DNA of 64,000 bases. Origin: Mizuhopecten yessoensis. Taxonomy: Eukaryota. The position numbers and the translations under genes are program-made. The notes beneath the pieces were generated by a model that made no database searches, was not told the origin of the DNA, and was given only the letters and a program-made list of their open reading frames with translations. Positions 9,025 through 54,300 of this stretch are shown here, piece after piece (within the stretch, counting starts at the first letter, position 1; the number at the start of each line of letters is the position of its first letter). Location of the stretch: positions 146,867-210,866 of the forward strand of contig NW_018405126.1 in assembly GCF_002113885.1 (NCBI RefSeq), read 5' to 3'.

Positions 9025-12000
9025 TCACCCAAGAAAATTGAGGTAAGCTACTCTTTCCTCAGCCGAATCTCTGTCCTTGACCTGGACTTCTATCTCCGCG
9101 CCACCGAATGTAAACTGGGCGTCTGCTCCTCTATTCAGCCCTTTGCTGGTGTCGGGCATTTCAATTACAAGTGAACCAATACACTCACAACCCTCGTCAG
9201 TAACATACTTGGGCGATGGGTGGGGCGAAATGTAGATATTAAACCGCATCACTGTTTGAAAGGCGTGTACGACATAATAATGTTTGGTTTCTAAACTGTT
9301 CCATACAGGAAGAGACTGTCCTTTCTGTGCATGTACACTGAATATATCACCTATTAATTCTGTGCCATATGTAAACCTACTGATCCTTTCCGTGATCGTG
9401 TCTAGCTCATGACCGTTGATGACGGCACCTTTCAGCACAGCAAGGCCAGCCTCGTGTGGAATGACGAGACGCTTGTCCGGGAACTTGGCGGAAATTTCCG
9501 TCTGTAGTAGAAGACATTCCGAGTATCCGCCGACGAGGAGGATGGCCTGAGCCTGTTCTACCTCTGGGTGTTTCATCAGCTCTACCACGTGGTCAATAAT
9601 CTTCTGGACGGATTGTCGGAACATCGTTTGAGCTAGCTCAGACTTGACTCGCAGTCTATCCATCTTCCATGTGAGGTTATTTGAATACTTCTTGTTAGAG
9701 GATATACTTTCCTCGACGGTTTTATTTGGATGAATATCGGCAAAAGTGTCCATCAGACTGATTGGGAGAGTAAACGTAATTTTTGCATCAGTCGCTGATG
9801 AGATTGATCTTTTCTTAGTTTCAAAAGACCTTTGTAGCTCCAGGTAGTCTGCAACATGTTTTTGCTTGAAGTCGTTAAACACATCAGCTCCCAAGATTTC
9901 AGAAAGAAGCATTTCAAACTCCTTGTCTACCATGGTCCCGCCCCAGTCCCCTCCATTTGCCATGTACACCTCTTTCAGCTTCAGACCTGGCAGCACCTCG
10001 TGTACAGTGATATCAACGGTTCCTCCTGTAGTGTAAACAAGTAGAGTTCAATATATCACAGTAACAACTCGTAAGAATAAATCAAAAGAAACTCAATGTC
10101 AATATGATAAAAAAATCAATGCATAGTTCAATTGTCTGATAAAGCGCATCCAAGTCAATCAAATTGATTGAGATAAGAAGTCATTCATTTTGAATTCACC
10201 CATTTGATATCAAAATTATAAGTAAAATAAAAAATTGTTCAAAAGTACTCAATACTTTTTATCCCTGTCCAACCGCGGGCAAGGGTTAGTTAGCTCGCGG
10301 TACAATGATATAAACTACAGGGTTCAAATCCGTTGTATTGATAGTCTAACCGGTTTGGCAGTGGTTAGGGATCCCTAGTGGATTGTAACAATTCCTGTTT
10401 TTATCATGCTGGGTATTGATATATATTAAAATTTCACACTCGGTAAAAAGTGAATTTAAAAAGATTTTTAGATATTCGGGAAATGGTTTGTAAGCGAATA
10501 AATAATAGGATGTCATTATTGCACAATACAGCCGTATGTGACGAAAACAACGCCAATGGAATACATATATGGCAACAACGGTCAATATACACCATAACTC
10601 TAGTCTGTTATGCATTAATACATCGTTTAGGATAACACAATGGATCATCATATGAAAAATGAAATCAGAAAAGTCAAACGGCTGAGAAAATAAGCAAATC
10701 GTGCCTGACCAATCGGATTTCATCATCTCCATGAAATATTTTTTTTCTCTTTTCTAACTTTTCGTGACCTTAACTATTGGCCTTTGTGTTGAGCGTGCGT
10801 CAAGGCGAACAAAAGGAGTTCTGTCCGTTCCTATTCCGGTAATGCTGGTTATCGTTTCTATAGATACGGTATAACAACATAATTTAACCTTCATCTCCAT
10901 TAACTCTTACCACCAACATCCACTACCATGTATCGCGACCCAGGTCGAAACACCACCAGGTTGTCTCCCCCTTTTCCAACAGACATGTCTTTCAGCGGTA
11001 GGTATTTACAGAACATAGCAGCTGCCTCGGCTTCCAACGACAGAACGAGTTGATAGCCTGGGATACCAGCCTAAACAACGATATTATTATTGTTTTTGAA
11101 ATTTATAAATGCTCAAAACTCAATTTTAAATGCTTTTTATATAATTTTAAGGAGCTTTCAAATACATATGTTTACCATAACAACGAAAATGATATCACCT
11201 TAACGTTGACATGTTACATTTTTTAAGGGTGCATGTGACACGAGTCAGAAAATAATGTTGTGATATGTAAGAAGTGAAATACTTAATGTAGTGAAAGATT
11301 GTTGTAATGACGATAATTATACACATAAGATAGTAAATGTACTCGAAAAAAAGGTTATTGGTGATTACCTGCTGAGCGCATTCCCTCATGAATTGTTTTG
11401 CCCGGTCATTCCAAATAGCGGGCACTGTCAGGACCCATCTGACGTCAGACATCAGCAATTCTAGCCCCCTCTTCTCACAGGTACCAAGGAGATGGTCCTT
11501 CAGGTACTTTACTGCCTCCGCAAACACTTTCATTGCCAGCATTGGTTTCTGATTTTGTGCGTACAATTTCATGGATCTGGTGATATCCTAAAACATACGT
11601 TTTAACATATCTAATTAACATATCTAATTAACATATATAGTTAAGAGTTAATTAGGTTCAGTTGGATGGTTAATGTATCTTTGTTACTATCATGTATACA
11701 ACCAATGTAAATAAAGTACTTATTTACCTTTTGCTCATAAAGTGACATCTTAAAGCGTCTAAAAAAGAACCAGTCATGGTGCTTATCGTCGTCTATCAGC
11801 TTGGCGTACTTGTCTTCGGCTTCAAAACCAAACGTGTCGAAACTTTCGTCTGGTTTAAACAGAACGCACGTAGAGGTCTTTAGGGAAGCGAGATTTCCGG
11901 ATCCTGCTTGCCATACAAGTGTACTGATATTCAATGGATTTTTGGTATACTCCAGCCGTGATGAGAATGCGTACCCCGAGTAGGTTGTGCCGAAGTCCAA

Positions 12001-20411: not shown

Positions 20412-23400
20412 TCAACCAAGAAAATTGAGATAAGTTACTCTTTCCTCAGCTGAGTCGCTGTCCGTAACATGGACTTCTATCTCCGCACCACCGAATGTAA
20501 ACTGGACGTCTGCTCCTCTATTAAGCCCTTTGCTGGTGTCAGTCATTTCGATTACATGTGAACCAATACACTCACAACCCTCGTCTGTAACATACTCGGG
20601 TGAAGGGTTGGGCGAAATGTAGATATCGAACAATAGCTTTGTTTGAAACGGTTCTGTGACAGAATAATGGCGGGGTTTTAAACTCTGCCACATAGGAATA
20701 GACTGTCCTTTCTGTGTATATACACTGAATATATCATGACAACGTGCCACACCTCCAATCACAACATACTTTTCCCTTGGATGTTTCCCCGGAATAAATA
20801 CTTTCGCAACATTTGTACCATATGTATATCTACTGATCCTTTCCGTGATTGTGTCTAGCTCATGACCGTTGATGACGGCACCTTTCAGCACGGCCAAACC
20901 AGCCTCGTGTGGAATGACGAGACGCTTGTCCGGGAACTTGGCGGAAATTTCCGTCTGTAGTAGAGGACATTCCGAGTATCCGCCGACGAGGATGATGGCA
21001 TGGGCCTGTTCTACCTCTGGGTGTTCCATCAACTCTACCACGTGATCTATAATCTTCTGGACGGATTGTCGGAACATCGTTTGAGCTAGCTCAGACTTGA
21101 TTCGCAGTCTATCCATCTTCCATGTGAGGTTATTTGCATACTTCTTGTTAGAGGATATACTTTCCTCGACGGTTTTATTTGGATGCATGTCGGCAAATGT
21201 GTCCATCAGACTGATTGGGAGAGTGAACGTAATTTTTGCATCAGTCGCTGATGAGATTGATCTTTTCTTAGTTTCAAACGACCTTTGTAGCTCCAGGTAG
21301 TCAGCAACATGTGTTAGCTTAAACTCGTTAAATACATCAGCTCCCAAGATTTCAGAAAGAAGCATTTCAAACTCCTTGTCGACCATGGTCCCGCCCCAGT
21401 CCCCTCCATTTGCCATGTAAACCTCTTTCAGCTTCAGACCTTCCAGCACTCCGTGTACCGTGATATCAACGGTTCCTCCTGTAGAGTAAATCAGTAGAGC
21501 TCAATATACAACAGTAACAACTCCAAAGAATAAATCAAAACAACTAAATGACAATATGATTAAGAAAAACTAAAACAAAAACATAGTTCGATTGTGTGAT
21601 AAAGAACACCTAATTCAATGCTATTGCCTATCCGAGGCAATAGCATTGAAGAAGCCAGTCCTTTTAAATTTATCCATTTGATATCAAAACTATCAATAAA
21701 ACATGATAATAATTATGCATAAGTACTAAATACGTTTTATCCCTGTCCAAGCGCGGTCAAAACACCAGAAAAATTCACGACGGTTTTTTGTTCCTTCTTT
21801 CCCTTAATTTAATTTATGGTTTAAATGTAGCGCGACCTGACCAGAATACTTCTGTTGAGGTACATCTGGTTGGTTAGCTCAGTTGGTTAGCTCGCGGTAC
21901 AATGATCTAACCTGCACGGTTCAAATCATGCGCTTCCCCGTTGTATTTTTTTTTTTAAATTTTATCTCTTTTGTTTTTTCATTAAAGTCCCGCAATGTAT
22001 CGGTTTCTTTTCAGAAAGTGTTTTCTGAGCTATAGTTGTGTCCAATTAAAAAATCCAATTAACAGGTCAACGAGTGACAGGGTTTGACAGCGGTTAGGGG
22101 ATCCTTTAGGTGATTGTGAGATAACGATACCTGTTGTTATAATACTAGATATTGATATGTATTCAAATTTCACACCCAGTGCAAAGTAAAGTTGTTGTTT
22201 TATTTTAGATATTCGAGAAACGGTTTGTAAGCAAAGGATAAATTATAGAATGGCATAAGTGCACAATACAGACTTATGTGACCACAATAAATCAAATTGA
22301 ATTAATGGTGAATATATACTCCACAACAATAGTCTTTTATGCGTTAATCTTTGTAAAGTCATAACATCATAACATTATAACATTAGCTATAGTACCTGAT
22401 CAATAGGACTTCTATATAACCATGATATTTTTTCTCTCTTTTCTAATTCTTGGTGGTTTCGTAACATCTCACTTGGCGAAACCTCACCTTTCGGCCTTGG
22501 TGATGAATGTGCGCCAGGGCCAGCAAAAGGAGTTCTGTTCCAATACCCACCGCGACAAAGCTCTAAAATTGCTACTTGTTCACACGTACCTATACTAGTA
22601 ATGCGGGTTATCGTATTGATAGACACGGTATAACAATATAATTTAATAATTCAACCGTTATCTCCATTAACCCTTACCACCAACATCCACCACCATGTAA
22701 CGGGACCTAGGTCGAAACACCACCAGGTTGTCTCCCCCTTTTCCAACAGGCATGTCTTTCAGCGGTAGGTATTTACAGAACATAGTAGCCGCCTCGGCTT
22801 CTAACGACAGGACGAGTTGATAGCCTGGGATACCAGCCTTAACAAAGATATTATTAATTTTCATTGAAATTTAGACTTGCTCAGAATTCGGTCTTAAATA
22901 CATTTCATCTAATTTAGAGGAGTTCTCATATACATATGTTTACCATAACAACGAAAATGGTATCACCTTAACGTTGACATGTTGCGTTTCCTCAGGGTTC
23001 ATGTGACACGTGTCAGAAAACATTATTGTGATATGTAAGAAGTGAAATACATAATGTATTATATATATGACTTTTATTGTTTTATTATGACAATATACAT
23101 ATGAGATAATAAAAGTACTCGAAGAAAAGCCATTGTCGATAACATGCTGAGCGCATTTCATCCGGGTTCATTTGACAAAAGTCAGAAAATAACACTTTGA
23201 TATGTAAAAAAATATCTTCTAATTGTAGTGACAGATTCTTGTAATGACGATATACACATTAGATTATAAATGTACTCGAAGAAAGGGCATTGTTGACTAC
23301 CTGCTGAGCGCATTCCCTCATGAATTGCTTTGCTCGGTCATTTCAAATAGCAGGCACTGTCAGGACCCATCTGACGTCAGACATCAGCAATTCTAACCTC

Positions 23401-23523
23401 CTTTTCTTACAAGTACCAAGGCGATAGATGGTCCTTCAGATACTTTACTGCTTCTGCAAACACTTTCATTGCCAGCATTGGTTTCTGATTTTGTGCATAC
23501 AATTTCATGGATCTGGTGATATC
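20412..23523 (-). pseudogene. HSPA12: HSPA12-like copy B, pseudogene (exons 4-6 only; terminal exon ORF intact)
   Basis: Exons 23523-23301, 22837-22678, 21478-20412. Exon 4 is 223 nt versus 219 nt in paralogs (4-nt insertion near 23422) and has TGG>TGA at 23343-23345. The ATG exon and exon 3 are absent, replaced by a LINE fragment. Confidence 0.92.
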
Positions 23524-24229
23524 CTAAAACAAACATCTGGTAATTGCTAATTTTGCATCACAGAACAAAATCCCACTCATAGAGTTCATAAATGTCTTAT
23601 CAAACAACCTTTTCTGTTTTAAATTTTCAATCCAGGCCTTTTTCAAAATTCTATCTCCATGTTGTGTCCTTTACTCAGTTAAAATGTACAGTTGTCTGTG
23701 GACCTATGACGTCATCTGTCCTTGTGAAGTCATTGTAATTATGACGTCTCTGTTACAATTGTTATATATATATTATACACAGAGAAACAGCCAGAACATG
23801 TTTTACATCATTATCCCTGTCCACAATTTGTAGCCAGCTCAGAGTAAGTGATACTATAGAGATTTGTTTTTAAACACAATCATGACAGAGTTTTTAAATC
23901 CTCATCATAAAGATTGCCCTCCTCAAAGTGCCTTCTTATTGTTTTTTATTTCTCCTTTAAGAAACACAACACAGATGTTCGCTGAATTTCTTTCTTTCTT
24001 TCAAACAAGTGTTTCTGTCTCTCCTACATCTAAAGTGAAAACAGTGTTCTTACATTACTCCGGTTGAAGTTCACATGTATCTTTGGTAAATGAAAGGTTT
24101 ATAGGTCTTCGATAGATCGTGAAAGCCGACCAATAGCCCCTTCCGAAACCGGGACAAAAAACCTGGTAAGATCCATACACTTTTTAACAGTGGAATCGTG
24201 TATAGATTTCAAAATTTCTACTAAAATTT

Positions 24230-25575
24230 GATGATACCTCCTTATATGGTCTCATTGAGGGAGACAGGCAAGAATGTGCTAATATATTAAATGATGATCT
24301 AAGGAAAATTTTAATCTGGGCTAGACAATGGGGAATTATCTTTAATCCAGATAAAACTGTAGCCCTGCTCTTCTCGAGGCGGGTTGACTCTGAGACACTG
24401 CATCCTAACCTATGTTTTGATGAATCACCAATTATTAATGTTTCTAATCATAAACACTTAGGTTTGTTTTTCAACAGCAAGGCTATTTGGTCTTACCACA
24501 TAAACTATATATACGAAAAAGCTTATAAAAGAATTAATATACTTAGAATGTTGAAATACAAAATTGATAGAAAATCCCTTGAAACTATATATATCACATT
24601 TATACATCCAATTCTGAAAAATGCAAATATTATATTGGCAAACTGCACGCAGCATGAATGCAGCGTCTTGGAGTCTATCCAACTAGAAGCAGCACGTATT
24701 ATTTCAGGGTTAAGACGTGGAACAAGTCATTTGCATCAAAATATTACTTTTTATAAAATATATAATAAGAACATGTCTATGATATAATTCAACCGTTCAT
24801 TAATAATAATGTTGAATATTATCATCTTCGCCACAATATAATTTTTGATGTTCCTATACCAAGAACTCAGTTATATAATGCCAGTTTTTTCCCGAAACTG
24901 ATGTCTGAATGGAATATTCCAACTTGCCTGTATCCCACAATGACATCCATTGGAGCTATAAAAAGAGATTTTTTACACTCAGATGAAATGGATTCTCAAC
25001 CCCAATGTACTAATGTAAAATGTACTTAAATACAATGGTGATCGAACATTTTATGTTACCTTTTGTCAACTTAGAAACTGTGCCAGAAACCTGAATTCAG
25101 ATCTATTTGAATCTCACCTAATTGATACCCCAGCCTGCTTATGTAGTTCTCCTGTTGATAATTGTGATCACTTCTTCTTCCATTGTACTCTGTATTCTAA
25201 TCAAAGGCAAATTCTCCTGAACTCCATTTCTGCTCTTAATGACATTATTCCATTAAATACTCAGACTTTTCTTTATGGATGTCGAAGACTCGATATCAAT
25301 ATGAATATAAGGATTTTGGAGATGGTTCAGAGATTCATTAAATATACTAGACGCTTTTACTAGATTACACTTACTCATTTATCTTTTTTCACATGACTTT
25401 GTTGTGTGGAATGATACCAGTACATTATTATACTATGTGTTATCCACCAGCAACATTTTAGTTGCCATTTTATAATGCCATAAATATTCTGAAATGAAAA
25501 ATGAATACATGTAAAATTTGACTGAAACAAATATGGTGGAGGTCATATATATAATTTAAAATATACATTATGTAA
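24230..25575 (+). mobile_element. 5'-truncated, degenerate non-LTR retrotransposon (CR1/L2-group reverse transcriptase C-terminal part plus 3' UTR)
   Basis: Translation DDTSLY...LNDDLRKILIWARQWGIIFNPDKT...HKHLGL...W..HI...KRINILR...Y..FI.P.L...LESIQLEAARIISG, later CLCSSPVDNCDHFFFHC and TRRFY* at about 25363. Stops and frameshifts present. 3' boundary approximate. Confidence 0.88.
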
Positions 25576-26344: not shown

Positions 26345-26910
26345 AACATGTAACATCTGTTACGATGTCTCCGTACCGCATCGAACACTTGTAATGATGA
26401 ATCTAACTCATGCAAACTTGATGTAAACTCACAACATGTATCACCCGTCATGATGTCAACTCACAACATGTATCACCCGTCATGATGTCAACTCACAGCA
26501 TGTGTCACCCGTCATGATGTCAACTCACAACATGTATCACCTGTCATGATGTCCCCATCACAACATGTATCACCTGTCATGATGTCCCCATCACAACATG
26601 TTTCACCCGTCATGATGTTCCCATTACAACATGTAACAACCGTCATGATGTTTCCGTCAGTACTTGTAACATCCGTCAAGATGTTTCCGTCACTACATAA
26701 AACACCCGTCATGATGTCTCCGTCACCATATATAACATCGTCATGATGTCTATCGTCACAACATGTAACACACGTCATGATGTCTCCGTCACCACATATA
26801 ACACCCGTCATGATGTCTCCGTCACCATTTATAACACCGTCATGATGTCTCCGTCACAACATGTAACACCCGTCATGATGTCTCTCGTCACCATATGTCA
26901 TATTCGTCAT
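26345..26910. repeat. 33-bp satellite array 2 (about 0.55 kb)
   Basis: Same monomer and same left (atggctcagaa) and right (gtctggggtg...ataaactcgtcactgatc) flanks as array 1. Confidence 0.95.
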
Positions 26911-27986
26911 GCTGTCTGGGGTGTAATATGATAAACTCGTCACTGATCTAAAATATCGAGCGATGACTTTAATCTTTGTGATGAGTTCATCCAACAGATC
27001 GAAATCTTTTGTGTAGATAAACCTGACTTGTGCTAATTGGTTGATGTAACCTGTTATAGTCATAAATCCATGTACTAGCAGGGCACAATACTGTTATAAC
27101 GTTGCTTACTTCCATAGTGTTAGAGGAATGGCTGTCGTATTTTACATTAATCTCTAAAATCCAAGCTTTTTTGCATATAAATAGTAATACACAAACGTTT
27201 GGAAATCATACATTTGAAAACACAAATGTATCGTAACAAAATATTGTCATATGACATCAAAAGATTAAAGTTAAGTAAAGTCTAACAATGACATACTTGT
27301 CACGGATTTCACCGAGTAATCAGAGAACAACAGAGACACATTAATTGTTTTTTGAACTTTAAACGATATCCTATAGCTCTGACCTTATAATACATGTACT
27401 ACTTTAAGAACAGACTAATAATACGTGTTAAATTCCTTTACTGTCTCCTTAATGTTATTTAGCCAATAAAAACAAAGATACTTGATTGATGAATATCAGA
27501 ATATATTTTATTAGAGTAGACAATTTGTACAATTACATTAGACATTTCATGGGGATAACTGGGAAACAATTACTTACTTTCTAATGTATAGTCTTTCCAA
27601 TCCGTACTTAATGCACTAGTCACTGACAAAACCAATACAGTTTCAATTACAAGGAAACACTGAATAAATCTTAACAGACATTCCGTTTCCAGTGATGTAT
27701 GAAACGTACATTCTTGTTCACCAGACCGAGATATCCGCCTTTCCGGCGGTGCTGGAAAGTTCTATCCGACCCACGGGTCTGGATCACTAGCACGCGCAGA
27801 CTGGCGGGGGAATTAAAGTCAAGCTATTGTTCGTGACGTCATTTTCTGACGTTTTGGGGTCAGTCAGGGTCATTGACGTCATTTACATTGCCATCATGTC
27901 TTCATATGCAAATGAAAAATGGGCGGACAGTTTACAACTTTATTAGAAGAGCAGCTGTTTTTACGGGTTTTAGGTAACAAGCAAGA

Positions 27987-28457: not shown

Positions 28458-31400
28458 TCAACCAAGAAAATTGAGATAAGATACTCTTTCCTCAGCTGAG
28501 TCGCTGTCCGTCACATGGACTTCTATCTCCGCGCCACCGAATGTAAACTGGACGTCTGCTCCTCTATTCAGTCCTTTGCTAGTGTCGGGTATTTCAATTA
28601 CAAGTGAACCAATACATTCACAACCCTCGTCTGTAACATACTCAGGTGATGGGTAGGGCGAAATGTAGATATCGAAAAATAGCTTTGTTTGAAACGGTTC
28701 TGTGACAGTATAATGGTGGGGTTTTAAACTCTGCCACACAGGAATTGACTGTCCTTTTTGTGCATGTACGCTGAATATATCATGACAACGTGCCAAACCT
28801 CCACCCATAAAATACTTCTCCCTTGGATGTTTCCCCGGAATAAATACTACCGACGTTTCTGTACCATATGTATACCTACTGATCCTTTCCGTGATTATGT
28901 CTAGCTCATGACCGTTGATTACGGCACCTTTCAAGACGGCAAGGCCAGCCTCGTTTGGAATGACAAGACGCTTGTCCGGGAACTTGGCGGAAATTTCCGT
29001 CTGTAGTAGAGGACATTCCGAGTATCCGCCGACGAGAAGGATGGCCTGAGTCTGTTCTACCTCTGTGTGTTCCATCAGCTCTACCACGTGATCTATTATC
29101 TTCTGGACAGATTGTCGGAACATCGTTTGAGCTAGCTCAGACTTGATTCGCAGTCTATCCATCTTCCACGTGAGGTTATTTGCATACTTCTTGTTAGAGG
29201 ATATGCTTTCCTCGACGGTTTTATTTGGATGCATATCGGCGAAAGTGTCCATCAGACTGATTGGGAGAGTAAACGTAATTTTTGCGTCAGTCGCTGATGA
29301 GATTGATCTTTTCTTAGTTTCAAACGACCTTTGTAGCTCTAGGTAGTCAGCAACATGTTTTTGCTTAAACTCGTTAAAAACATCAGCTCCCAAGATTTCA
29401 GAAAGAAGCATTTCAAACTCCTTGTCGACCATGGTCCCGCCCCAGTCCCCTCCATTTGCCATGTAAACCTCTTTCAGCTTCAGACCTTCCAGCACCTCGT
29501 GTACCGTGATATCAACGGTTCCTCCTGTAGAGTAAATCAGTAGAGCTCAATATACAACAGTAACAACTCGTAAGAATAAATCAAAACAACTAAATGACAG
29601 TATGATTAAAAAAAACTAAAACAAAAACATAGTTTGATTGTGTGATAAAGCGCACCTAACTCAATGATAGTGCCTCGGATTAGAAGCCAGTCCTTTTGAA
29701 TTTATCCATTTGATATCAAAACTATCAGTAAAACATCATAATAATTATTCATAAGTACTAAATACGTTTTATTCCTGTCCAAGAGCGGTCAAAACACCAG
29801 AAAAATCCACGACGGTTTTTTTGTTCCTTCCTTCCCTTAAATTAATTTATGGTTTAAATGTAGCGCGACCTGGCCAGAATACTTCTGTTGAGGTACACTA
29901 GATTGGTTAGCTCAGTTGGTAAGCTGGTAAGCTCGCGGTACAATGATCTAAACTGCACGGTTCAAATCCTGCACTACCCCGTTGTATTATTTTTTATTAT
30001 TTTATCTCTATTGTTTTTGCATAAAAGTCCCGCAATGTATCGGTTTCTTTTCAGAAAGTTTTTTCTAAGCTATAGTCGTGTCCAATTAAAAAATCCAATT
30101 AACAGGTCAACGAGTGACAGGGTTTGGCAGCGGTTAGGGGGCCTTTAGGTGATTGTGAGATAACGATACCTGTTGTTATCACTAGATATTGATATGTATT
30201 CAAATTGCACACCCAGTGCAAAGTAAAGTTGTTGTTTTATTTTTAGATATTCGAGAAACGGTTTGTAAGCAAAGGATAAATTATAGAATGTCATAAGTGC
30301 ACAATACAGACTTATGTGACCACAATAAAGCAAATGGAAATAATGGTGAATATATACTCCACAACAATTGTCTGTTATGCGTTAAACTTTGTAAAGTCAT
30401 AACATCATAACATTAGCCAATGGTACCTGATCAATAGGACTTCTATATTACCATGATATTTTTTCTCTCTTTTCTAATTCTTGGTGGTTTCGTAACATCT
30501 CACTTGGCGACACCTCACCTTTCGGCCTTGGTGTTGAATGTTCGCCAGGGCCAGCAAAAGGAGTTCTGTTCCAATACCCACCGCGACAAAGCTCTAAAAT
30601 TGCTACTTGTTCACACGTACCTATACTAGTAATGTGGGTTATCGTATTGATAGACACGGTCTAACAATATAATTTAATAATTCAACCTTTATCTCCATTA
30701 ACTCTTACCACCAACATCCACCACCATATATCGCGACCCAGGTCGAAACACCACCAGGTTGTCTCCCACTTTTCCAACAGACATGTCTTTCAGCGGTAGG
30801 TATTTACAGAACATAGCAGCCGCCTCGGCTTCTAACGACAGGACGAGTTGATATCCTGGGATTCCAGCCTGAACGAAGATATTATTAATGTCATTGAAAT
30901 TTAAACTTGCTCAGAATTCGGTCTTAAATACATTTCATCTAATTTAGAGGAGCTCTCATATACATATGTTTACCATAACAACGATAATGGTATCACCTTA
31001 ACGTTGACATGTTGCGTTTCCTCAGGGTTCATGTGACACGTGTCAGAAAACATTATTGTGATATGTAAGAAGTGAAATACATAATGTATTATATATATGA
31101 CTTTTGTTGTTTTATTATGACGATATACATATGAGATAATAAAAGTACTCGAAGAAAATCCATTGTCGATAACATGCTGAGCGCATTTCATCTGGGTTCA
31201 TGTGGCAAAAGTCAGAAAATAACACTTTGATATGTAAAAAAATATCTTCTTATTGTAGTGACAGATTCTTGTAATGACGATATACACATTAGATTATAAA
31301 TGTACTCGAAAAAAGGGCATTGTTGACTACCTGCTGAGCGCATTCCCTCATGAATTGCTTTGCTCGGTCATTCCAAATAGCAGGCACTGTCAGGACCCAT

Positions 31401-33091
31401 CTGACGTCAGACATCAGCAATTCTAACCTCCTTTTCTTACAAGTATCAAGGAGATGGTCCTTCAGATACTTTACTGCTTCTGCAAACACTTTCATTGCCA
31501 GCATTGGTTTCTGATTTTGTGCATACAATTTCATGGATCTGGTGATATCCTAAAACAAACATTTGGTAATTGCTAATTTTGCATCACAGAACAAAATCCC
31601 ACTCATAGAGTTCATATATGTCTTATCAAACAACCTTTTCCGTCTTAAATTTTCAATCCAGGCCTTTTTCAAGTACCTAGGAAAAATTCTATCTCCATGT
31701 TGTGTCCTTTACTCAGTAAAAATGTACAGTTGTCTGTGGACCTATGACGTCATCTATCCTTGTGAAGTCATTGTAATTATGACGTCTCTGTTACAATTGT
31801 TATATATATATTATACACAGAGAAACAGCTAGAACATGCTTTACATCACTTTCCCTGTCCACAATTTGTAGCCAGCTCTGAGTTAGCGGTACTATAGAGA
31901 TTTGTTTTAAAACTCAATCATGACAGAGTTTTTAAATCCTCATCATAAAGATTGCCCTCCCCAAAATGCCTTCTTATTGTTTTTTATTTCTCTCTTAAGA
32001 AACACTACACAGATGTTCGCTGAATTTCTTTCTTTCAAATAAAGTGTTTCTGTCTCTCCTACATCTAAAGTGAAAACAGTGTTCTTACATTACTCCGGTT
32101 GAAGTTCACATGTATCTTTGGTAGTTGAAAGGTTTATAGGTCATCGATAAATCGTGAAAGCCGACCAATAGCCCCTTCCGAAACCGGGACAAAAAAACCT
32201 GGTCAGATCCATACAATTTTTAACAGTGGAATCGTGTATAAATTTCAAAATTTTCTGCTAAAATTTGTAAAAATTGTTTTCTTAATTTTACATTTAGAAT
32301 GGCATCATAATTTAATCCTTAGCAAATTGGAATCCAGAATAATGTATATATGAAGGTGGTAAAACAACAGTGAATCACTGTGTGGAATTATATAAATCAT
32401 TATACATTTCGACCTCTTTAACATCTAATTAACTTAGTTATGATTGCTGGCGAAGAGCGCGGGTCTTTTGTTTATTCCCGTGCTGTTAAAACATGTGGCT
32501 AGGAGGCCATGTATATCAGTAATGTGAATTATTTACCTTTTGCTCATAAAGTGACATCTTAAAGCGTCTAAAAAAGAACCAGTCATGGTGCTTATCGTCG
32601 TTTATCAGCTTGGCGTACTTGTCTTCGGCTTCAAAACCAAACGTGTCAAAACTTTCGTCTGGTTTAAACAGAACGCACGTAGAAGTCTTTAGGGAAGCGA
32701 GATTTCCGGATCCTGCTTGCCATACAAGTGTATTGATATTCAATGGGTTTTTGGTATACTCCAGCCGTGATGAGAATGCGTACCCCGAGTAGGTTGTGCC
32801 GAAGTCCAATGCTGCCACTAAAATGTATGGACTGTTCTTCAGGTCTCTTTTCTGTAATACATAACAACTTAACAATTACCTGATGGCTGTCAGCATTTTA
32901 TTTTCATGATAGTATGTTGGGGTTGAATATCAATCGGAATGTTTTATTGATGAAATATCTTTTAAAATAAAAATAACCGAGAACAACAACAACAAAAGTA
33001 CTGAAGCGTTAACTGTGCTCGTATGTCTCAATATTATATCATGACTCACCAGTATCCTAGGCTGTGTCTGCTGTCGAACTTGTGACTCCAT
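28458..33091 (-). CDS. HSPA12: HSPA12-like atypical Hsp70, copy C (predicted 600 aa)
   Basis: Exons 33091-33050, 32851-32537, 31549-31331, 30868-30709, 29524-28458 (42+315+219+160+1067=1803 nt). GT-AG introns, no disruption seen. Confidence 0.9.
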
Positions 33092-39300: not shown

Positions 39301-40490
39301 GTCCTGATGTTTCCATCACAACATGAAACACCCGTCATGATGTCTCTGTCACAACAGGTAACACCCGTCACGATGTCTTCGTCACCACATGTGACACTCG
39401 CCATGATATCTCCCGTCACTACTTGAACTCCCGTCATGATGTCTACGTCACAACATATAACATCCGTCATAATGTCTCCGTCACAACATGAAACACCCGT
39501 CATGATTTCTCCGTCACAACATGTAATACCGGTCATGATGCCCCTGTAAAAACATGTAACATCCATCATGATGTCTACGTCACAACATGTAACACCCGTT
39601 ATGAATTCTCCGTCAAAACATGTAACAACCGTCATAATGTTCCCGTAACAACGTATAACATCCGTCATGATGTCTACGTCACTACACGTTATACCCGTCA
39701 TGATGTTCCCGTCACAACAAATAACATCAGTCATGATGTCTACGTCACTACATGTAAAACTCGTCATCAATGTCTTCCGTTACAACTTATAACATCCGTC
39801 ATGATGTCTCCGACAAAACATGTGACACTTGTAACGGTGTCAACCGTCACAACATGTGACTCTCGTCATGATTTCTCCGTCACAACATGTGACATCCGTC
39901 ATGATGTCTCCGTCACAACATGTGACTCTCGTCATGATTTCTCCGCCACAACATGTGACACTCCTCATGGTGTCAACCGTCACTACAGGTAAAACTCGTC
40001 ATCAATGTCCCCCTTTACAACATATAACATCCGTCATGATATTGCCGTCACAACATGAGACTTCCGTCATGATGTCTCTGTCACAACATGTGACACTCGT
40101 CATGGTGTCAACCGTCACTACATGTAACACTCGTCATGACTTCTCTCGTGACAACATATAACATTCGTCATGATCTCTCCGTCACAACATGTAATACCCG
40201 TCATGATTTCTCCGTCACAACATAAAACATCCGTCATGATGTCTTCGTCGCAACATTTAACACCAACCATGATGTCTCCGTCACAACATATAACATCCGT
40301 CATTCTGTCTCCGTCACCACATGTTACACCCGTCATGATGTCTCCCTCACAACAATTACCACTCGTTATGATGTCTCCCTTATCACATGTAACACTCGTT
40401 ATGATGTCTCCGTCACAACATTTAACACCCGTCATGATGTTTCCGTCACAACAGGTAACACCCGTCATCATATCTCCCGTTACAACATGT
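36374..40490. repeat. 33/34-bp satellite array 3 (about 4.1 kb) with an internal inverted block
   Basis: 38235-40490 consists of diverged forward monomers related to arrays 1 and 2. 36420-38232 is the reverse complement of the monomer. Confidence 0.95.
36420..38232 (-). repeat. Inverted homogeneous block: about 6 x 33 bp (gtgacggagacaatgggacgggtgttacatgct) then about 47 x 34 bp (gtgacgggtgttaaatgttgtgactggagacaac)
   Basis: Near-identical monomers with only occasional C>T in gagacaac. The reverse complement tcacaacatttaacacccgtcac matches the 33-bp family. Confidence 0.95.
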
Positions 40491-42333: not shown

Positions 42334-42828
42334 TCAACCAAGAAAATTGAGGTAAGCGATTTGTTCTTCAGCTGACTCTCTGTCCTTGACCTGGACTTCT
42401 ATCTCCGCACCACCGAATGTAAACTGAGCGTCTATCCCTCTATCCATTCCTTTGCTGGTGTCGGGCATTTCAATTTCAAGTGAACCAATACATTCACAAC
42501 CTTCGTCTGTCACATACTCGGGCGATGAGTTGGTCGAAATATAGATTTCGACATTCGTACTTGTTTGAGACGGTGATGTGACGTTGTACTTAATAGATTC
42601 TAAACTCTCCCATACAGCTATAGCCTCTCCTTTCGTTGCATGTACACTGAATATATCACCACAATACGCTTTACCGTTTCCTTGTATTTTACGTTTTTCC
42701 ATTGGATGTATTTCATGAATAAAGTCTGTCACACATTTTGTGCCATATGTAAACCTACTGATCCTTTCCGTGATTGTGTCTAGCTCATGTCCATTGATGA
42801 CGGCACCTTTCAGCACGGCCAAACCAGC
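42334..42828 (-). pseudogene. HSPA12: HSPA12 fragment E: isolated 3' part of the terminal exon (164 aa, essentially the substrate-binding domain), frame open
   Basis: AGLAVLKGAVING...YLNFLG*. Its upstream sequence (42830-43330) is the 3' flank of copy D, which is repeated again downstream at about 41872-42333. Confidence 0.85.
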
Positions 42829-43330
42829 CTGTATTAAACCGTGTAGAAAATTCTGAAATTGGAATCTTTGTTGATGATTTATGATGCATAAAGTATTGGT
42901 CATCGCTACTTTTATATTGTATCCAACACAAGCTTTATCACGGGTCTTATAACTCTGCAGACGAATGCTACAACAAGTTATTGGTATTGTCCTAAACAGC
43001 ACAAGCTGATATATTTTGAAAAAAAATTGAATGTTAAATACGTCAAATCCTGGTAACATTGAAATTAAATAAAATGATATAGTCTGCAACAGTCACCAAA
43101 CGTTGCTACACCACGACAGAGTTGTGTTGAGTAATATTCTATGCTAATACAATAGGAGGCCAGACAAGAGGGAAGTTTCACAAAAATACCGGAAAATCAG
43201 ATACGCAAATATTTCCGTTTATGAGAGCACCTTTGTTGATTTTTGTTCGCTAAACGTTTATCTATTTGATAAAATACAATTGACGCATGTGCAAAATATT
43301 AAACGATTTCATTCGGTTTTACTGTTGCTG

Positions 43331-46300
43331 TCAACCAAGAAAATTAAGGTAGGCGATTTGTTCTTCAGCTGAATCTCTGTCCTTGACCTGGACTTCTATC
43401 TCCGCGCCACCGAATGTAAACTGGACGTCTGCTCCTCTGTTCAGTCCTTTGCTGGTGTCGGGCATTTCAATTACAAGTGAACCAATACATTCACAACCCT
43501 CGTCTGTCACAAACTCGGGTGAAGAGTTGGTCGAAATGTAGATTTCGACATGCGCACTTGTTTGAGACGGAAATGCGACATTGTACTGAATAGATTCTAA
43601 ACTCTCCCATACAGCTATAGCCTCTCCTTTCGTTGCATGTACACTGAATACATCATCACAATAATCTTTACCGTTCCTTTTCATTATACTTTTTTTTTCA
43701 ACTGGATGTATTTCAGGAATAAAGGGTGTACTACATTTCGTGCCATATGTAAACCTACTGATCCTTTCCGTGATTGTGTCTAGCTCATGTCCATTGATGA
43801 CGGCACCTTTCAGCACAGCAAGGCCAGCCTCGTGTGGAATAATGAGACGTTTGTCCGGGAACTTGGCGGAAATGTCTGTCTGTAGTAGAGGACATTCCGA
43901 GTATCCGCCGACGAGAAGGATTGCCTGAGCCTGTTCTACCTCTGGGTGTTTCATCAGCTCCACCACGTGGTCTATTATCCTCTGGACGGATTGTCGGAAC
44001 ATCGTTTGAGCTAGCTCAGACTTGATTCGCAGCCTATCCATCTTCCACGTGAGGTTATTTGCATACTTCTTGTTAGAGGATATTTTTTCCGCCACGGTTT
44101 TATTTGGAAGAATCTCATCAAAAGTTTCCATCAGACTTATTGGGAGAGTAAACGTAATTTTTGCATCGGTCGAGGACGAAATTGATCTTTTCTTAGTCTC
44201 AAAAGACCTTTGTAGCTCTAGGTAGTCTGCAACATGTTTTTGCTTAAACTTATTAAATACATCAACTCCCAAAATCTCGGAAAGAAGCATTTCAAACTCC
44301 TTGTCTACAGTGGTCCCGCCCCAGTCCCCTCCATTTGCCATGTGAACTTCCTTCAGCTTCAGACTCGGCAGCACCTCGTGTACAGTGATGTCAACAGTAC
44401 CCCCTACAATGTGAACAATTATAATAAAAACAAATATAAAAACGAATGAGACTAAAAGCAGAATAACTAATTGGCAACGCGATTAAACAAGAAAGTCTAA
44501 CTAAAGCATAGCTTGATACAGCACCAACCATAGTTGTTTATATTTGTCCCAAATATTTGTGAGCCAAGCAACTGAAATATTAACGCGAAACTCAAAAAAT
44601 ATGATTTAATCCTGAAACCAAGATCCCTGCAAAATATTCAAGAAATGTAACAAGACATGAGCAAGGAAAAAAATGTTAAAAAATAAACGAATCTGTACGT
44701 CTTACACCGAGGATTAATAGGTGTTTTTATTTATCTTAAGTACCCACAAATGGACATATACTATGTATAACTATAACTATAAATGTATATGTTACTATCA
44801 AAAAAACTAAGCTCAGTGGTTATCTATCTAGCTTGTTTTAAAAAAAATGTTTTTTTGTAAGTAGCTGACAAAAAACAAATTTCCATGTGTCCTGTTATTT
44901 TTACCCAAACAAAGAAGTTGCATTTGGCCCCATATTAGTAACATGACGTCGGTATAGAAATTAAAATCGACAATAAACTACATGTATTTCATTTCATATC
45001 AAAACAACAAATAAACATGATAATATTTCAAAAAGTACTAAAATCCATGTTCATTTTTTTTCTCTTAGTAGAATGGCTCACATTAGTGTTTTTTATTTAA
45101 AAATAGTCAGTCTAACTTTCTGAAGATCGGTGTCAAGCTCGGCCAGGGAATTCTATTTAAAAAAAGGAAAAGGGATTTAAAAAACTGAACTGCTATTGAA
45201 TTTCATTAAACACTATAAACGAATTTAGTGTATCATCGTGCCATAGTTTTTGTTTTGCAATAATTATTTGGTGCTGCAATGGAGAGTACATTATTTTGAC
45301 AAATATCGAATCATAGATAAAACTTGAATAGTGCTTGACATTGCAGTGGAAAACTTACCTCAGTGACATAAAGTTCTTACGAGGTTAAAACATTTTTACA
45401 TGTAAACGAAATGAAGTGCATCGCATAGCATCACATGCGGAGATTTTAAGGTTCAAAAGGCCCCTAAAAGATGCTGTAGTCACCTATAATTTCAACCGTC
45501 TGAAAAGTCATGTTCAAAGACATCAACTCAAAATCGGAACTTATATATGTTATTTGTACAAAAAATACATAGCCAGGTTAACGTAGTCAAAAATTAGGCA
45601 TTAAGGCTGATGTCTTCATAAAAATAGCTCATTGGACTTATAACATGTCAACATATTTTGCGATCAAACTGAGAGCTGAGAAACGACCTATAATTTAGGG
45701 TTTATGTATATACCTAGGTCATGCGGAGCTTTATTTCTCTTCTACTAGCTGTTGAGAGGAATTTCGACCTCAAATAAAGGTAGATGTTGCAGTGCAAAAT
45801 CACTAAAATCATAGTAAAATCGCCTAGTAATACATTTTAACAATTTATAAATAAGAAAAAAAATGCTAAGTAACCTTGATCGATAAATGAACTTTAGATG
45901 ATGTGCCATTTGATAACATTCTGTGATTATATGAATGCGCTAGATATGTTATAAACATTGAAGCTGAAAAATACAATAATGTTTATAACAAGTCTAGCTC
46001 GTTTATAAAAACATTCAATGTTAAAAAAGGACATTTTATATGAAGTTTAAGTAGTGTTTATGGTCAAACGTTTTACACGGTAAAATATGTTACGTGGACG
46101 TTTTACTATGATTTTGTACTTTCCCATAGCAACAATCATCTTCTTGTGAGGCCGGTATACCTCTCCACACACAGTTAATTGAGGCTTATGTACATAAGCC
46201 AGGTTTAAATGGACAAATAATGTTTCTATTAATACTAGTCAAGCCTCGATGGACTAGTCTGCAACATTAACCTAAACATCGTGTATATATATGTATGTCA

Positions 46301-51387: not shown

Positions 51388-54300
51388 TTATCCTAGAAAG
51401 TTAAAATAGGCATTGGTTTCCTTCTGCGTGTGCATGTCGAACGCTGCGACTTCGATCTCCGCTCCACCAAACGTTAATACCACATCCACTCCCCTATCCA
51501 ATCCTCTTGTCGTGTCGGGCATTTCAACAATCAGCTCTCCGATACTTTCAACGCCCTCCTCCAAAACGTACATTGGATTCGTATCTTTGGTTGTGAACAA
51601 CCGCACTGGGAGCGTTTTCTGATCTCGTGAAACTACCTTATAGCGTTGTGATTCGCCTCTGAGGCCGACAGGTACTGCATTCCCAACCCTCACGTGTGTA
51701 CAGAAAGCATTGGCACAGAGTGGCATGCCATCTTCTCCTAAAACCATTAACCGCGGATCATGTAATCCAAGTACGAAAGGTACACTCGCACCAACGCCAT
51801 AGGTAAGTCTGCTGATCCTCTCGGTAACAGCTTCTAGCTCATGGCCATTGATGACAGCTCCAATGAGTACTGCAAGTCCAGCTTGGTTTGGAATTACGAG
51901 CCTTTTATTTTGAAACGTTGTTGATAATTCGTTATGAAGAATAGGACATTCGGCGAATCCACCTACTAAGATGATGGCGTCGATGTCCGCTACCTCTGGC
52001 TTCTGAAGGAGCTCCTTGACATGATCTATGATCTTGCGGACAGACGGTTCAAACAAAGTTTTAGCAATATCTGATTTAATGCGCAGCTTGTCACTTTTCC
52101 AGGTCAGATTATTTGCATAATCTTTACTGGTTGCCACTCTGTCTTCTACGGATTTTCCTGGATTTATCTCTTCAAAGATATCAAGCAAACTGCATGGGAG
52201 TGTGAAGGTTATCTTCGAGTCAGAAGAAGAATGTATGCATCTCTTTTTGGTTTCAAAACTTCTTTGAAGTTCCAATAGATCTGAAACATTCTCACGTTTG
52301 AATTTCTCAAAAACATCATGTCCCAAAAGGTTGACCAGCAACTTTTCAAATTCTGTGTCTACCATTGTTCCTCCCCAATCTCCACCATTTGCCATGTGGA
52401 TTTCCTTCAGCTGCAGCCCGTCCTCAACCTGATGGACCGTGATATCGACAGTTCCTCCTGAAGAAAACAAATAGCACATTTGAAGATGTACAGTTCATAC
52501 AACCTATTCAAACTGATAATGGAAGTGAAGTTAAGGTGCAACTGCACGCTGATTGTGGACATTTTAACAAACGTCAGGATAATCAACAAACTCCTGATAC
52601 CTCAATCAATAACAACATCGACGATGCACACAGCTACCACTCATGAACTATCTCCAGACACAAGGAGTTCAGTCATTTATGATTATTCCTAAATTTACTC
52701 AGAAAAAGTTATGCCATGTTTCAGTATCGCTAAAATACTCTAAGATACATCATAATGATTAACATGTGAACTTTCAGTAAAGATAACTTAATATACAATG
52801 TCGTTAAAATAACAAATATTGTTTTAATTAGCTATTATCCAGAATTATTCGATAGTTTATTAAAAGTGAAACATTATCTATGCGATCTTTCTGATTATTT
52901 GTGTAAGTTTTAATGATTTTAATTGAAACCTACTTTCAACAATAAAAACGTCTATTTTTATTTCAATTATGATCATTCTGCATCTGTCGACATAATAAAC
53001 GGACATCTATATGTTGATGGTAGTCAGGGAGGGATAAGTTGGCGAATTACGTGATAAACACACATATTTTAAGTAACATTCATATATGGCAAAAATAGAA
53101 ATAACAAAAATTCAGTAAAACATCTCTCTCAATCAAACTGTTGGCATTATAAAGGGGTTCGGTGATATGTTGACATATATACGAAACGAGACATTAGAAT
53201 ACATTGCATGCCGACGTTAAACGTGATTACAAATGACAATTGTCGTTATATAGATTTCTTAAAAATAATTATCGAGGTTAGTGTCTGTGTTGTATTGTTT
53301 AATCCTCGATATCCATGGGTTACGCTCACTTTCACTCTCTGCACCCCTGGAATATGTGATAGCAAAATCGAAGGGTCAGTTTGCACCGCATTGTGGATGA
53401 GACAAGAAGGCTAGTTTGATCATTTGATGTACTTTAAAAGAATCTCGTGGTCGCATAACGGTAAAACGTATTGGCTTTGAAGTCGGGAGTCGCGTCTCTG
53501 TAATCTTCAAAGGACAAGTATCAAATAGCCAGCAAAGAGCGAAAGTGAGCGTAACCCCTGGATGCCGAGGATGTTTGTTTATAATCTGTAAGTTATTTCT
53601 TTCCACACTCGGTGAAGGTGAAGATGGAGCTTCCCTTTTTGATCTTTTCTGCCCCTGTTTGTAAACAAATAGGGGATATCGAATTTAAAAATATAGACTT
53701 TATTAATTTTACAAAAATTATGAAATAAATAAATTTCAACTCATATGAATCACTTTTCTTGGCCCAAATGTTAGCGCGCGGGAGTCTTTATGTGGGAGGA
53801 AACCGGAGTACCTGGAAAACCCCACGTAGGGTATATCTGATTACGTCTATAACGAATACCAGTAACACGTACCACCGACATCCAGCACCATGTATTTGGC
53901 CCCCGGTTTGAAGATAGAGATGTTGCCAGCTTTGCCGACAGTCATATCACTGACTGGGAGGTATTTGCAGTAGAGAGCGGCAGCTTCAGCCTCAAGCGAC
54001 ATTACCAGTTGTGGACCTGGTATCCCAGCCTGTCAAAAAATAATAATCAAAAGATACATAAAAAATAAATATCATTACTCAAACAAACCAACATTGACAA
54101 CGTCAACTTAGAGGTTATAAAATACATTCATAAATGCAAAACTAAGATTTTATTTGTATTTATAAAAGACATTGATTTCGTTCCAGTAACGCCTTGCTTA
54201 CAAGGTGACGTCATACCAACATACTCCTACGCTAATTGTAACTACTATTGTACAACTTTATATCAATGTATACAAAAAGTTTGTTAGTGTATTACAGGTA

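What the first reader, a model, noticed from the sequence alone, without database searches (positions are those of the whole stretch)
28650..28860. Non-synonymous mutation hot spots map to Hsp70 substrate loops L1,2 and L3,4
Seen, sequence between TYG(T/V) and the DIFSV-equivalent: B NVAKVFIPGKHPREKYVVIGGVARCH (20736-20813), C ETSVVFIPGKHPREKYFMGGGLARCH (28782-28859), E KCVTDFIHEIHPMEKRKIQGNGKAYCG (42658-42738), D KCSTPFIPEIHPVEKKSIMKRNGKDYCD (43655-43738), F GASVPFVLGLHDPRLMVLGEDGMPLCA. B and C differ at 8 of 12 nt in the first four codons (aat gtt gcg aaa vs gaa acg tcg gta) although their introns and spacers are obviously highly similar. A second patch reads YYVVHAFQTVMRFN (A), YSVTEPFQTKLLFD (B), YNVTSPSQTSTNVE (E), YNVAFPSQTSAHVE (D). 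By-eye alignment to DnaK (SLGIETMGGVM...FSTAEDNQSAVTIH) places these on the arch and pocket that clamp the peptide.
Basis: partly seen in the sequence, partly recalled or inferred. Interest (0 to 1): 0.75.

Follow-up and report, generated by a model that had tools for sequence, protein, structure and literature searches.

The report
Hypervariable substrate cleft in scallop HSPA12
In a tandem array of scallop HSPA12-type (lid-less Hsp70) genes, recent copies differ mostly in a few residues that line the predicted client-binding cleft; these residues change faster than silent sites, which suggests this hugely expanded chaperone family is diversifying what it binds.

Summary
The window is a Mizuhopecten yessoensis array of HSPA12-like genes on the minus strand. 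All quoted peptides and coordinates are exact. B and C differ at 8 of 12 nt after the TYG motif, against 5.1% in their introns.

The last 149 residues fold as an Hsp70 SBD-beta with no alpha-helical lid (AF2 pLDDT 93.6; top PDB hits all Hsp70 SBDs, Z 14-16). Patch 1 is the end of beta1, a roughly 22-residue insertion in L1,2, and the start of beta2. Patch 2 is beta3-L3,4-beta4.

The hot spots are general. In 10 independent recent paralog pairs of this genome, and in 27 pairs from other bivalves, residues 212-217 (DnaK 401-406) form the most variable window. Residues 233-239 and 260-275 come next. The ATPase part, the SBD underside and the pocket-floor aromatic stay conserved.

A model with a locally raised rate fits as well, so selection is favoured but not proven.

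Caveats:
- Copy B is a disabled gene.
- The inserted loop tip itself is not hot.
- Patch 2 is not elevated between B and C.

The parts
28458..29525 (-). Last exon of gene C (RefSeq XP_021349338.1, HSPA12A-like). It encodes lobe II of the ATPase domain plus the whole C-terminal domain. The stop codon is at 28458-28460.
   Evidence: ORF. tblastn of P0001 matches at 100%. RNA contigs from three studies splice 29523^30708 with GT..AG on the minus strand.
30707..32851 (-). Upstream coding exons of gene C: 32851-32537, 31549-31331 and 30871-30707.
   Evidence: tblastn of P0001. The exon 3/4 junction is seen in RNA contigs.
28461..28907 (-). Lid-less Hsp70-type substrate-binding domain (SBD-beta), ORF residues 197-345. 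The protein ends where helix A of the lid would begin.
   Evidence: AF2 pLDDT 93.6, pTM 0.86. Foldseek. VIA-align Z up to 15.9, model 1-149 on DnaK 388-505.
28845..28862 (-). Hot spot H1, residues 212-217 (TETSVV), at the end of beta1 and base of L1,2. Equivalent to DnaK I401-G406.
   Evidence: 4-7 of 10 independent paralog pairs differ at each site. Omega 3.8 overall; omega 3.7 on codons 213-216 without B/C. Top-ranked window in 27 pairs from other bivalves.
28797..28844 (-). HSPA12-specific insertion in loop L1,2, residues 218-233, with conserved anchors F218 and H223. It is only moderately variable.
   Evidence: Length difference to Hsp70 SBDs. Absent in copy A. Omega 0.56.
28779..28796 (-). 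Residues 234-239, the return side of the L1,2 hairpin and start of beta2. C237 is conserved. This is a secondary hot spot.
   Evidence: Omega 1.45, not significantly above 1.
28671..28718 (-). Residues 260-275, beta3-L3,4-beta4. Y262 and Q269 are conserved anchors; 260, 263, 265 and 272-275 are variable.
   Evidence: Alignments to Ssb and to scallop Hsp70. Per-site counts. Omega for 260-265 is 1.9, p=0.003. Omega for 262-275 is 1.03.
20412..21479 (-). Last exon of copy B, with the ORF open. Patch 1 lies at 20736-20813.
23299..23525 (-). Disabled exon 2 of copy B. It has a 4-nt insertion at 23422-23425 (frameshift) and a TGG>TGA change at 23343. Homology to C stops near 24235, before the first coding exon.
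   Evidence: No RefSeq protein exists for B.
43331..44404 (-). Last exon of gene D. Patch 1 lies at 43655-43738.
42334..42831 (-). Orphan SBD cassette E. Patch 1 lies at 42658-42738. It matches residues 437-601 of RefSeq isoform X2 of D.
   Evidence: (99.4% identity).
9025..10026 (-). Last exon of gene A. It lacks the L1,2 insertion (TYGTELIGDIFS), which restores the canonical Hsp70 hairpin length.
51388..52479 (-). Last exon of the more distant paralog F, used as an outgroup.

Best explanation
The finding lies in the C-terminal domain of gene C, one of a tandem array of scallop HSPA12-like genes. These are atypical Hsp70s.

Shown here:
- The domain is an Hsp70 substrate-binding beta-sandwich with no alpha-helical lid.
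- It carries an insertion of about 22 residues in loop L1,2.
- Among recently duplicated copies, amino-acid replacements concentrate on the elements that form the client cleft in canonical Hsp70. These are the 4-6 residues after the invariant TYG motif (end of beta1 and base of L1,2, including the arch position), the base of the return strand, and beta3-L3,4-beta4.
- The ATPase part, the underside of the SBD, the pocket-floor aromatic (Y262) and the scaffold anchors (F218, H223, C237, F241, Q269) stay conserved.

Inferred:
- After each duplication, selection favours copies whose cleft rim differs. The expanded family therefore covers a wider range of clients or ligands, while keeping the ATP-driven Hsp70 engine and the NBD-SBD interface.
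- The elongated L1,2 hairpin may stand in for the missing lid.
For: Fold and register. Canonical cleft residues are taken from PMC4110032. HSPA12 lacking the lid is stated in PMC13580251.

Hot spots in this genome, from ten independent recent pairs:
- pN for 212-217 is 0.36. Gene-wide pS is 0.164 and NBD pN is 0.041.
- Pooled pairwise codon ML gives omega 3.8 for 212-217 (LRT 45.5), 1.9 for 260-265 (p=0.003), 0.26 for the NBD and 0.42 for the remaining SBD positions outside the named classes.
It gives omega 3.7, p=1.3e-7.

Within the window, total nucleotide divergence of the patches exceeds 4-fold-site divergence. C/D patch 1 is 50% against 24% (P=5e-7). A/D patch 2 is 48% against 22% (P=2e-4).

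Replication: in 27 disjoint close protein pairs from other bivalves, the top two of 340 six-residue windows start at 212 and 270.

Anchor residues inside the patches are retained, as expected for diversification on a scaffold.

No donor for either patch exists in the assembly.

Gene C is spliced and expressed, and its patch is invariant in four samples, while 13 other sites in the exon show variants.
Against: - Allowing codons 213-216 their own rate multiplier gives rho 3.75 and omega 0.92 (LRT for rho 4.8). A locally raised substitution input with neutral evolution fits as well.
- 54% of changed codons in 212-217 carry two or three nucleotide changes. That is compatible with multi-nucleotide events.
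- pS is also somewhat raised across beta1-beta2.
- Omega for the rest of patch 1 (0.86) and for patch 2 as a whole (1.03) is not above 1.
- Hot-spot class boundaries were chosen from the same data.
- B, half of the headline pair, is a disabled copy with a higher lineage omega.
- No HSPA12-client complex is known.
Confidence: 0.6

Rival explanations
1. A local mutational process rather than selection. The short patches are replaced in multi-nucleotide events. These could be micro gene conversion from paralogs absent from this assembly or haplotype, template switching, or error-prone repair. The patches then evolve neutrally.
For: - The local-rate model gives rho 3.75 with omega 0.92.
- 54% of changed codons in H1 are multi-hit, against 13% in the NBD.
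- B/C shows 8 contiguous-patch changes between identical flanks.
- There are signs of reticulation and mosaicism in this array. There are 8 AB|CD against 2 AC|BD informative sites. A 90-nt SBD-underside window is nearly identical among A-D, next to windows that are 27-38% diverged. 4-fold divergence is 2.3 times intron divergence for B/C.
Against: - No sequence within 3 mismatches of either 26-nt patch occurs elsewhere in the 988-Mb assembly.
- None of 63 paralogs has a near-matching H1 patch.
- Anchor residues within the patches are preserved while neighbours turn over.
- The multi-hit excess is modest once the high rate is allowed for (about 20 observed against 15 expected; my own arithmetic from the counts).
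- No variants appear in C's patch in four samples, although 13 variant sites occur elsewhere in the exon (weak, because contigs drop rare variants).
- The same positions are hottest in 27 pairs from other bivalves. A sequence-context mutational hot spot would not obviously predict this.
Confidence: 0.25
2. Relaxed constraint or pseudogene decay. The loops are functionless surface in a degenerate SBD, and the B/C contrast reflects drift in the dead copy B.
For: - B lacks the first coding exon and has a frameshift and a nonsense codon in exon 2.
- The B lineage carries radical changes at conserved SBD sites and has a higher N/S ratio than C.
- Omega is about 0.9-1.0 for most of patch 1 and for patch 2.
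Against: - Neutral drift cannot exceed the silent rate. Codons 213-216 run at 3.7 times the gene-wide synonymous rate in nine pairs without B.
- Patch nucleotide divergence exceeds 4-fold divergence in pairs of annotated genes (A, C, D).
- The fold is predicted with very high confidence and has conserved anchors.
- C is expressed.
- The pattern replicates in other species.
Confidence: 0.1
3. An artefact of assembly or alignment in a repetitive tandem array.
For: The array is flanked by 33-bp satellites, and its copies are 92% identical.
Against: - Independent RNA contigs from four studies match C's exon, including the patch, with no differences.
- The pair alignments are ungapped between the invariant TYG and F218.
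- The same pattern appears in RefSeq proteins of other bivalves.
Confidence: 0.03

Closest known systems
HSPA12A/HSPA12B (Hsp70-12), the atypical Hsp70 subfamily, and its massive expansion in bivalves
   Same: The best database hits are all named 'heat shock 70 kDa protein 12A/12B-like'. Gene C is RefSeq XP_021349338.1. It has an Hsp70 NBD, a beta-only SBD, no lid and no EEVD. It belongs to tandem arrays: at least 80 last-exon matches in this genome. This fits the expansions reported in oyster, scallop and clam (PMC11268181, PMC10939072, PMC13580251).
   Different: The literature I could search reports gene counts, expression and whole-gene Ka/Ks. In oyster, 14 of 30 tandem pairs have Ka/Ks above 1 (PMC11268181). 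I found no paper that localises the fast sites to the substrate cleft. Function is stated to be unknown (PMC13580251).
Canonical Hsp70/DnaK substrate-binding domain (SBD-beta with peptide cleft between L1,2 and L3,4)
   Same: Same fold (Z 14-16, rmsd 1.7-2.9 A over 109-118 residues). Same strand order. Conserved equivalents of G400, F426, Q433 and the I-P of L2,3.
   Different: - No SBD-alpha lid.
- An insertion of about 22 aa in L1,2, plus 3- and 5-residue insertions elsewhere.
- Sequence identity of only 11-17%.
- In canonical Hsp70 the cleft is among the most conserved parts, whereas here it is the most variable.
Germline-diversified recognition families with hypervariable binding sites on a conserved scaffold (for example the MHC peptide-binding region, or expanded invertebrate immune lectins)
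   Same: This is a functional analogy only, drawn from general knowledge. The shared features are tandem multigene arrays, replacement rates above silent rates confined to the binding site, and homogenised or conserved remainder.
   Different: There is no evidence here of allelic hypervariability: C's patch is invariant in four samples. No ligand is known, and the protein class is different.

Membership tests
Hsp70 superfamily | Actin-like Hsp70 nucleotide-binding domain (Pfam PF00012 above the gathering score) | tested here: met
   P0001 (full gene C) scores 43.3 bits, E 2e-11, against a cut-off of 20.6, covering profile positions 94-372. The last exon alone is sub-threshold at 15.4 bits. Foldseek matches the 345-aa model to full-length DnaK, Hsc70 and BiP over about 340 columns.
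Hsp70 superfamily | SBD-beta sandwich following the NBD and linker | tested here: met
   AF2 pLDDT 93.6. The top 50 Foldseek hits are all Hsp70 SBDs. VIA-align Z is 13.8-15.9.
Canonical Hsp70 (DnaK/HSPA1/HSPA8 type) | Alpha-helical lid (SBD-alpha) and C-terminal EEVD | tested here: not met
   The model ends at the equivalent of DnaK residue 505. The protein ends ...YLNFLG.
Canonical Hsp70 (DnaK/HSPA1/HSPA8 type) | Conserved hydrophobic pocket and arch residues (DnaK I401, F426, V436, I438; M404, A429) | tested here: inconclusive
   By alignment the equivalents are T212, Y262, L272, F274, S215 and T265. Y262 is conserved. The arch and rim positions vary in 4-6 of 10 pairs. Side-chain geometry was not checked.
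HSPA12 subfamily | Closest relatives are HSPA12A/B-like, with lid-less architecture | tested here: met
   Among the 120 hits listed, those that carry a family name are all HSPA12A/B-like (a few read only 'Heat shock 70 kDa protein'), and many rows are unnamed, hypothetical or uncharacterised. Lid absence is shown. HSPA12 being lid-less is stated in PMC13580251.
Sites under positive (diversifying) selection | Non-synonymous rate significantly above synonymous rate at specified codons | tested here: inconclusive
   Omega is 3.7 (p=1.3e-7) with a gene-wide synonymous rate. It falls to 0.92 when the four codons get their own rate. Patch divergence exceeds 4-fold divergence.

The most novel reading that the evidence does not exclude
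Bivalve HSPA12 arrays are a germline-diversified recognition repertoire. Under this reading an Hsp70 engine carries a cleft rim that is diversified after each duplication, much like the variable site of an innate immune receptor. Disabled or orphan copies that keep an open binding-domain exon (B, E) would supply alternative binding domains, either by alternative 3' splicing, as RefSeq isoform X2 of gene D does with cassette E, or by conversion.
Probability: 0.2. Interest if true: 0.85.

Novelty: new variant of a known kind. Interest (0 to 1): 0.6.

Why it matters
HSPA12 is the least understood Hsp70 branch. A 2026 review states that its function is unknown and that the reason for its expansion to tens of copies per bivalve genome is unclear (PMC13580251).

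This work shows three things:
- The copies keep a confidently folded, lid-less Hsp70 substrate-binding domain.
- The fastest-changing residues are the ones that form the client cleft in canonical Hsp70.
- The same positions are hottest across bivalves.

That turns 'why so many copies' into a testable hypothesis of client-specificity diversification. It also names the few residues to swap in binding assays. If confirmed, it would be an unusual case of a core chaperone fold used as a diversified recognition module.

Tried and rejected
- Pfam on the last exon alone gave only sub-threshold HSP70 hits ending at the NBD/linker. PF27033, listed for some relatives, is not in the local Pfam copy.
- Sequence-only links of the C-terminal domain to Hsp70 SBDs are weak: E 0.43 to Ssb and hhalign probability 2.5%. 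I use them only for register, and rest the fold claim on structure.
- Gene-conversion donor search. There is no second genomic match within 3 mismatches for either 26-nt patch, and no near patch among 63 paralogs. I found no frame-shifted or inverted relation between the B and C patches by eye.
- The pseudogene-only explanation is rejected because the hot spot persists without B and in other species.
- Allelic hypervariability was looked for in RNA contigs of four runs and not seen. Contigs hide rare variants, so this is weak.
- Restricting to single-hit codons gives n1/N 0.093 against gene-wide s1/S 0.131. This is uninformative because it discards the multi-hit codons that make up most changes.
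- Two earlier-findings word searches: one returned nothing and the other only context.
The last exon was searched by reference, and the full protein used was the database entry P0001.
- No stretch of the window was N, and no contig looked human.
Full report
**What the window is**

The window is contig C1799:146867-210866 of a 988-Mb assembly. Its proteins are RefSeq entries of the scallop Mizuhopecten yessoensis, named 'heat shock 70 kDa protein 12A-like'.

Six related last exons lie on the minus strand:
- A, 9025-10026
- B, 20412-21479
- C, 28458-29525
- E, 42334-42831
- D, 43331-44404
- F, 51388-52479

Gene C (P0001, 600 aa) has coding exons at 32851-32537, 31549-31331, 30871-30707 and 29525-28461. 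RNA-derived contigs from three studies join 29523 to 30708 with GT..AG on the minus strand.

The genome holds at least 80 matches to this last exon. The last exon was used by reference, and the full-length protein was the database entry.

**Observation**

After the invariant TYGT, C reads GAA ACG TCG GTA and B reads AAT GTT GCG AAA. That is 8 of 12 nt different, between identical flanks.

The B and C units align over about 5.2 kb. Mismatch is 5.1% in introns, 4.4% downstream and 6.6% in the last exon. The 150-nt window with patch 1 is the most diverged at 14%.

The 8/12 cluster is far beyond the intron rate (P=1.9e-8) and beyond the exon's 4-fold-site rate of 12% (P=1.3e-5). Patch 2 is not elevated between B and C (2/42). 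It is elevated in C/A, A/D and C/D, at 38-48% against 4-fold rates of 19-24%. D/E shows 22% in the 60-nt L1,2 window, against 10% in both coding and downstream sequence.

**Fold**

An AF2 model of the 345-aa last exon has pLDDT 86.8. A model of residues 197-345 alone, built with 63 paralogs of this genome as the alignment, has pLDDT 93.6 and pTM 0.86.

The domain model's top 50 Foldseek hits in the PDB are all Hsp70 substrate-binding domains, including DnaK 1dkx and 1dkz, human HSP70 4po2, BiP, HscA and Kar2. TM-scores are 0.63-0.67 and rmsd about 2.7 A.

VIA-align gives Z 13.8-15.9. The model spans DnaK 388/389-505 and human HSP70 395-505. The protein therefore stops where helix A of the lid would start. 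[quoted passage not shown]

The model is about 30 residues longer than the matched SBD-beta. About 22 of these lie in L1,2, 3 lie before beta3, and 5 lie in L4,5.

**Register**

- phmmer to DnaK runs from the NBD through the linker. It pairs RISRYTYGTETS with DVTPLSLGIETM.
- The family profile to Ssb pairs the patch-2 region with FTTVADNQQTVQF.
- hhalign to the scallop's own canonical Hsp70 SBDs pairs Y262-T-V-T-E-P-F-Q269 with F-T-T-Y-S-D-N-Q, and L272/F274 with V/I of beta4.

The VIA ranges for human HSP70 (model 8 on residue 395) put G211 on human G402, which is DnaK G400.

The canonical description places the cleft between L1,2 and L3,4, with pocket residues DnaK I401, F426, V436 and I438 and arch residues M404 and A429 (PMC4110032). 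On that basis the B/C four codons 213-216 correspond to DnaK 402-405, and patch 2 corresponds to 426-439.

Copy A lacks the insertion. Its TYGTELIGDIFS lines up residue for residue with SLGIETAGGVMT.

**Generality**

From 63 open last exons of this genome I took ten phylogenetically separate recent pairs with dS 0.08-0.29.

Replacements per site peak at 212-217, where 4, 5, 4, 6, 7 and 5 of 10 pairs differ. Further peaks are at 234, 238-239, 260, 263, 265, 272-275 and 283. The NBD averages 0.8 of 10 and never exceeds 4.

By structural element, pN is:
- 0.245 in beta1
- 0.232 in beta3
- 0.141 in beta2
- 0.041 in the NBD
- 0.04-0.08 in beta5-beta8

The nucleotide view shows the same picture in most pairs. 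There is an invariant TAY GGN, then 5-6 scrambled codons, then an invariant TTY.

Thirty-six disjoint close protein pairs from many bivalves show the same profile. After removing every M. yessoensis protein, the two highest-ranked of 340 six-residue windows start at 212 (0.40 differences per site) and 270 (0.38). The NBD rate is 0.125.

**Selection or mutation**

A pooled pairwise codon likelihood with one synonymous rate per pair gives these omega values:
- 3.8 for 212-217 (LRT 45.5)
- 1.9 for 260-265 (p=0.003)
- 1.45 for 234-239 (not significant)
- 1.17 for 272-275 (not significant)
- 0.56 for the insertion tip
- 0.26 for the NBD
- 0.42 for the remaining SBD positions outside the named classes

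Those classes were chosen from the same data.
- omega 3.7 for 213-216 (p=1.3e-7)
- omega 0.86 for 217-238
- omega 1.03 for 262-275

However, giving 213-216 their own rate multiplier fits slightly better (rho 3.75, LRT 4.8) and brings omega to 0.92. In addition, 54% of changed codons there are multi-nucleotide. Positive selection therefore cannot be separated formally from a local multi-nucleotide replacement process.

Several points count against a conversion source:
- Neither 26-nt patch has a second match within 3 mismatches in the assembly.
- No paralog carries a near patch.
- Anchor residues inside the patches are retained.
- C's patch shows no variants in four samples, although 13 other sites of the exon do.

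Some points leave room for reticulation:
- There are 8 AB|CD against 2 AC|BD informative sites.
- 4-fold divergence for B/C (12%) is higher than intron divergence (5.1%).
- A 90-nt underside window is nearly identical among A-D (3-9 differences), next to windows with 24-34 differences.

**Status of the copies**

B is disabled:
- Its homology to C ends near 24235, before the first coding exon.
- Exon 2 has a 4-nt insertion at 23422-23425 and a TGG>TGA change at 23343.
- There is no RefSeq protein for it.

Polarising B/C differences with A, D and E shows both lineages changed. B has relatively more replacements, including L308H and P313T at conserved sites.

E matches residues 437-601 of RefSeq isoform X2 of D at 99.4%.

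**Literature**

Bivalve HSPA12 expansions and whole-gene Ka/Ks above 1 for some oyster tandem pairs are published (PMC11268181). Papers on Tegillarca and on non-canonical Hsp70s do not analyse the SBD sites (PMC10939072, PMC12692333). I found no report that localises fast sites to the cleft. The library lacks most subscription journals, including the original scallop Hsp70 paper.

**Limits**

Orientation of side chains toward the cleft is inferred from homology, not measured.
- The pair analyses use last exons only, and one pair includes a copy with an upstream stop.
- The read data were contigs, not raw reads.

Noticed in passing
window 14093-18864, 26429-26917, 36430-40491: 33/34-bp satellite arrays with strong GC skew separate the gene copies. 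The block at 36430-38233 is 98% homogeneous and inverted relative to its neighbour.
   Followed up: partly
window 20412-24235 (copy B): B is 5'-truncated, with a frameshift (23422-23425) and a nonsense codon (23343) in exon 2. It nevertheless keeps an open 356-codon last exon and intact exon 3/4 splice signals. It lies directly downstream of gene C on the same strand. Whether it is spliced onto C was not tested.
   Followed up: partly
window 42334-42831 and 43331-44404: RefSeq isoform X2 of gene D (XP_021349340.1) takes its last 165 residues from orphan cassette E. One gene is therefore predicted to carry two alternative substrate-binding domains.
   Followed up: partly
window 32537-32851, 11728-12042, 48745-49059: The first coding exon is 96.5-98.5% identical at DNA level among A, C and D. 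Adjacent introns are only 73-83% identical. This suggests homogenisation or very strong constraint on the N-terminal exon.
   Followed up: no
B/C last exon versus introns (28458-32267 against 20412-24230): 4-fold degenerate sites differ by 12% (17/142), while introns differ by 5.1%. Silent exon sites are more diverged than introns, which is unexplained. One possibility is small conversion tracts from other paralogs.
   Followed up: partly
last-exon codons 301-330 of A-D (C: about 28536-28625): A 90-nt stretch encoding beta5-L5,6-beta6 has only 3-9 differences among A, B, C and D, although the neighbouring 90 nt have 24-34. This is a sharp mosaic of homogenised and hypervariable segments.
   Followed up: partly
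window 30616-31191: Intron 2 of gene C contains a degenerate tandem copy of the end of exon 2 plus the start of the intron (ORF 30970-31191 resembles ...RECAQQV...). The same arrangement is present in A.
   Followed up: no
window 9349-9360 (copy A): A has an in-frame loss of the 22-residue L1,2 insertion, giving exactly the canonical Hsp70 hairpin length. A is annotated as a protein (XP_021349317.1).
   Followed up: partly
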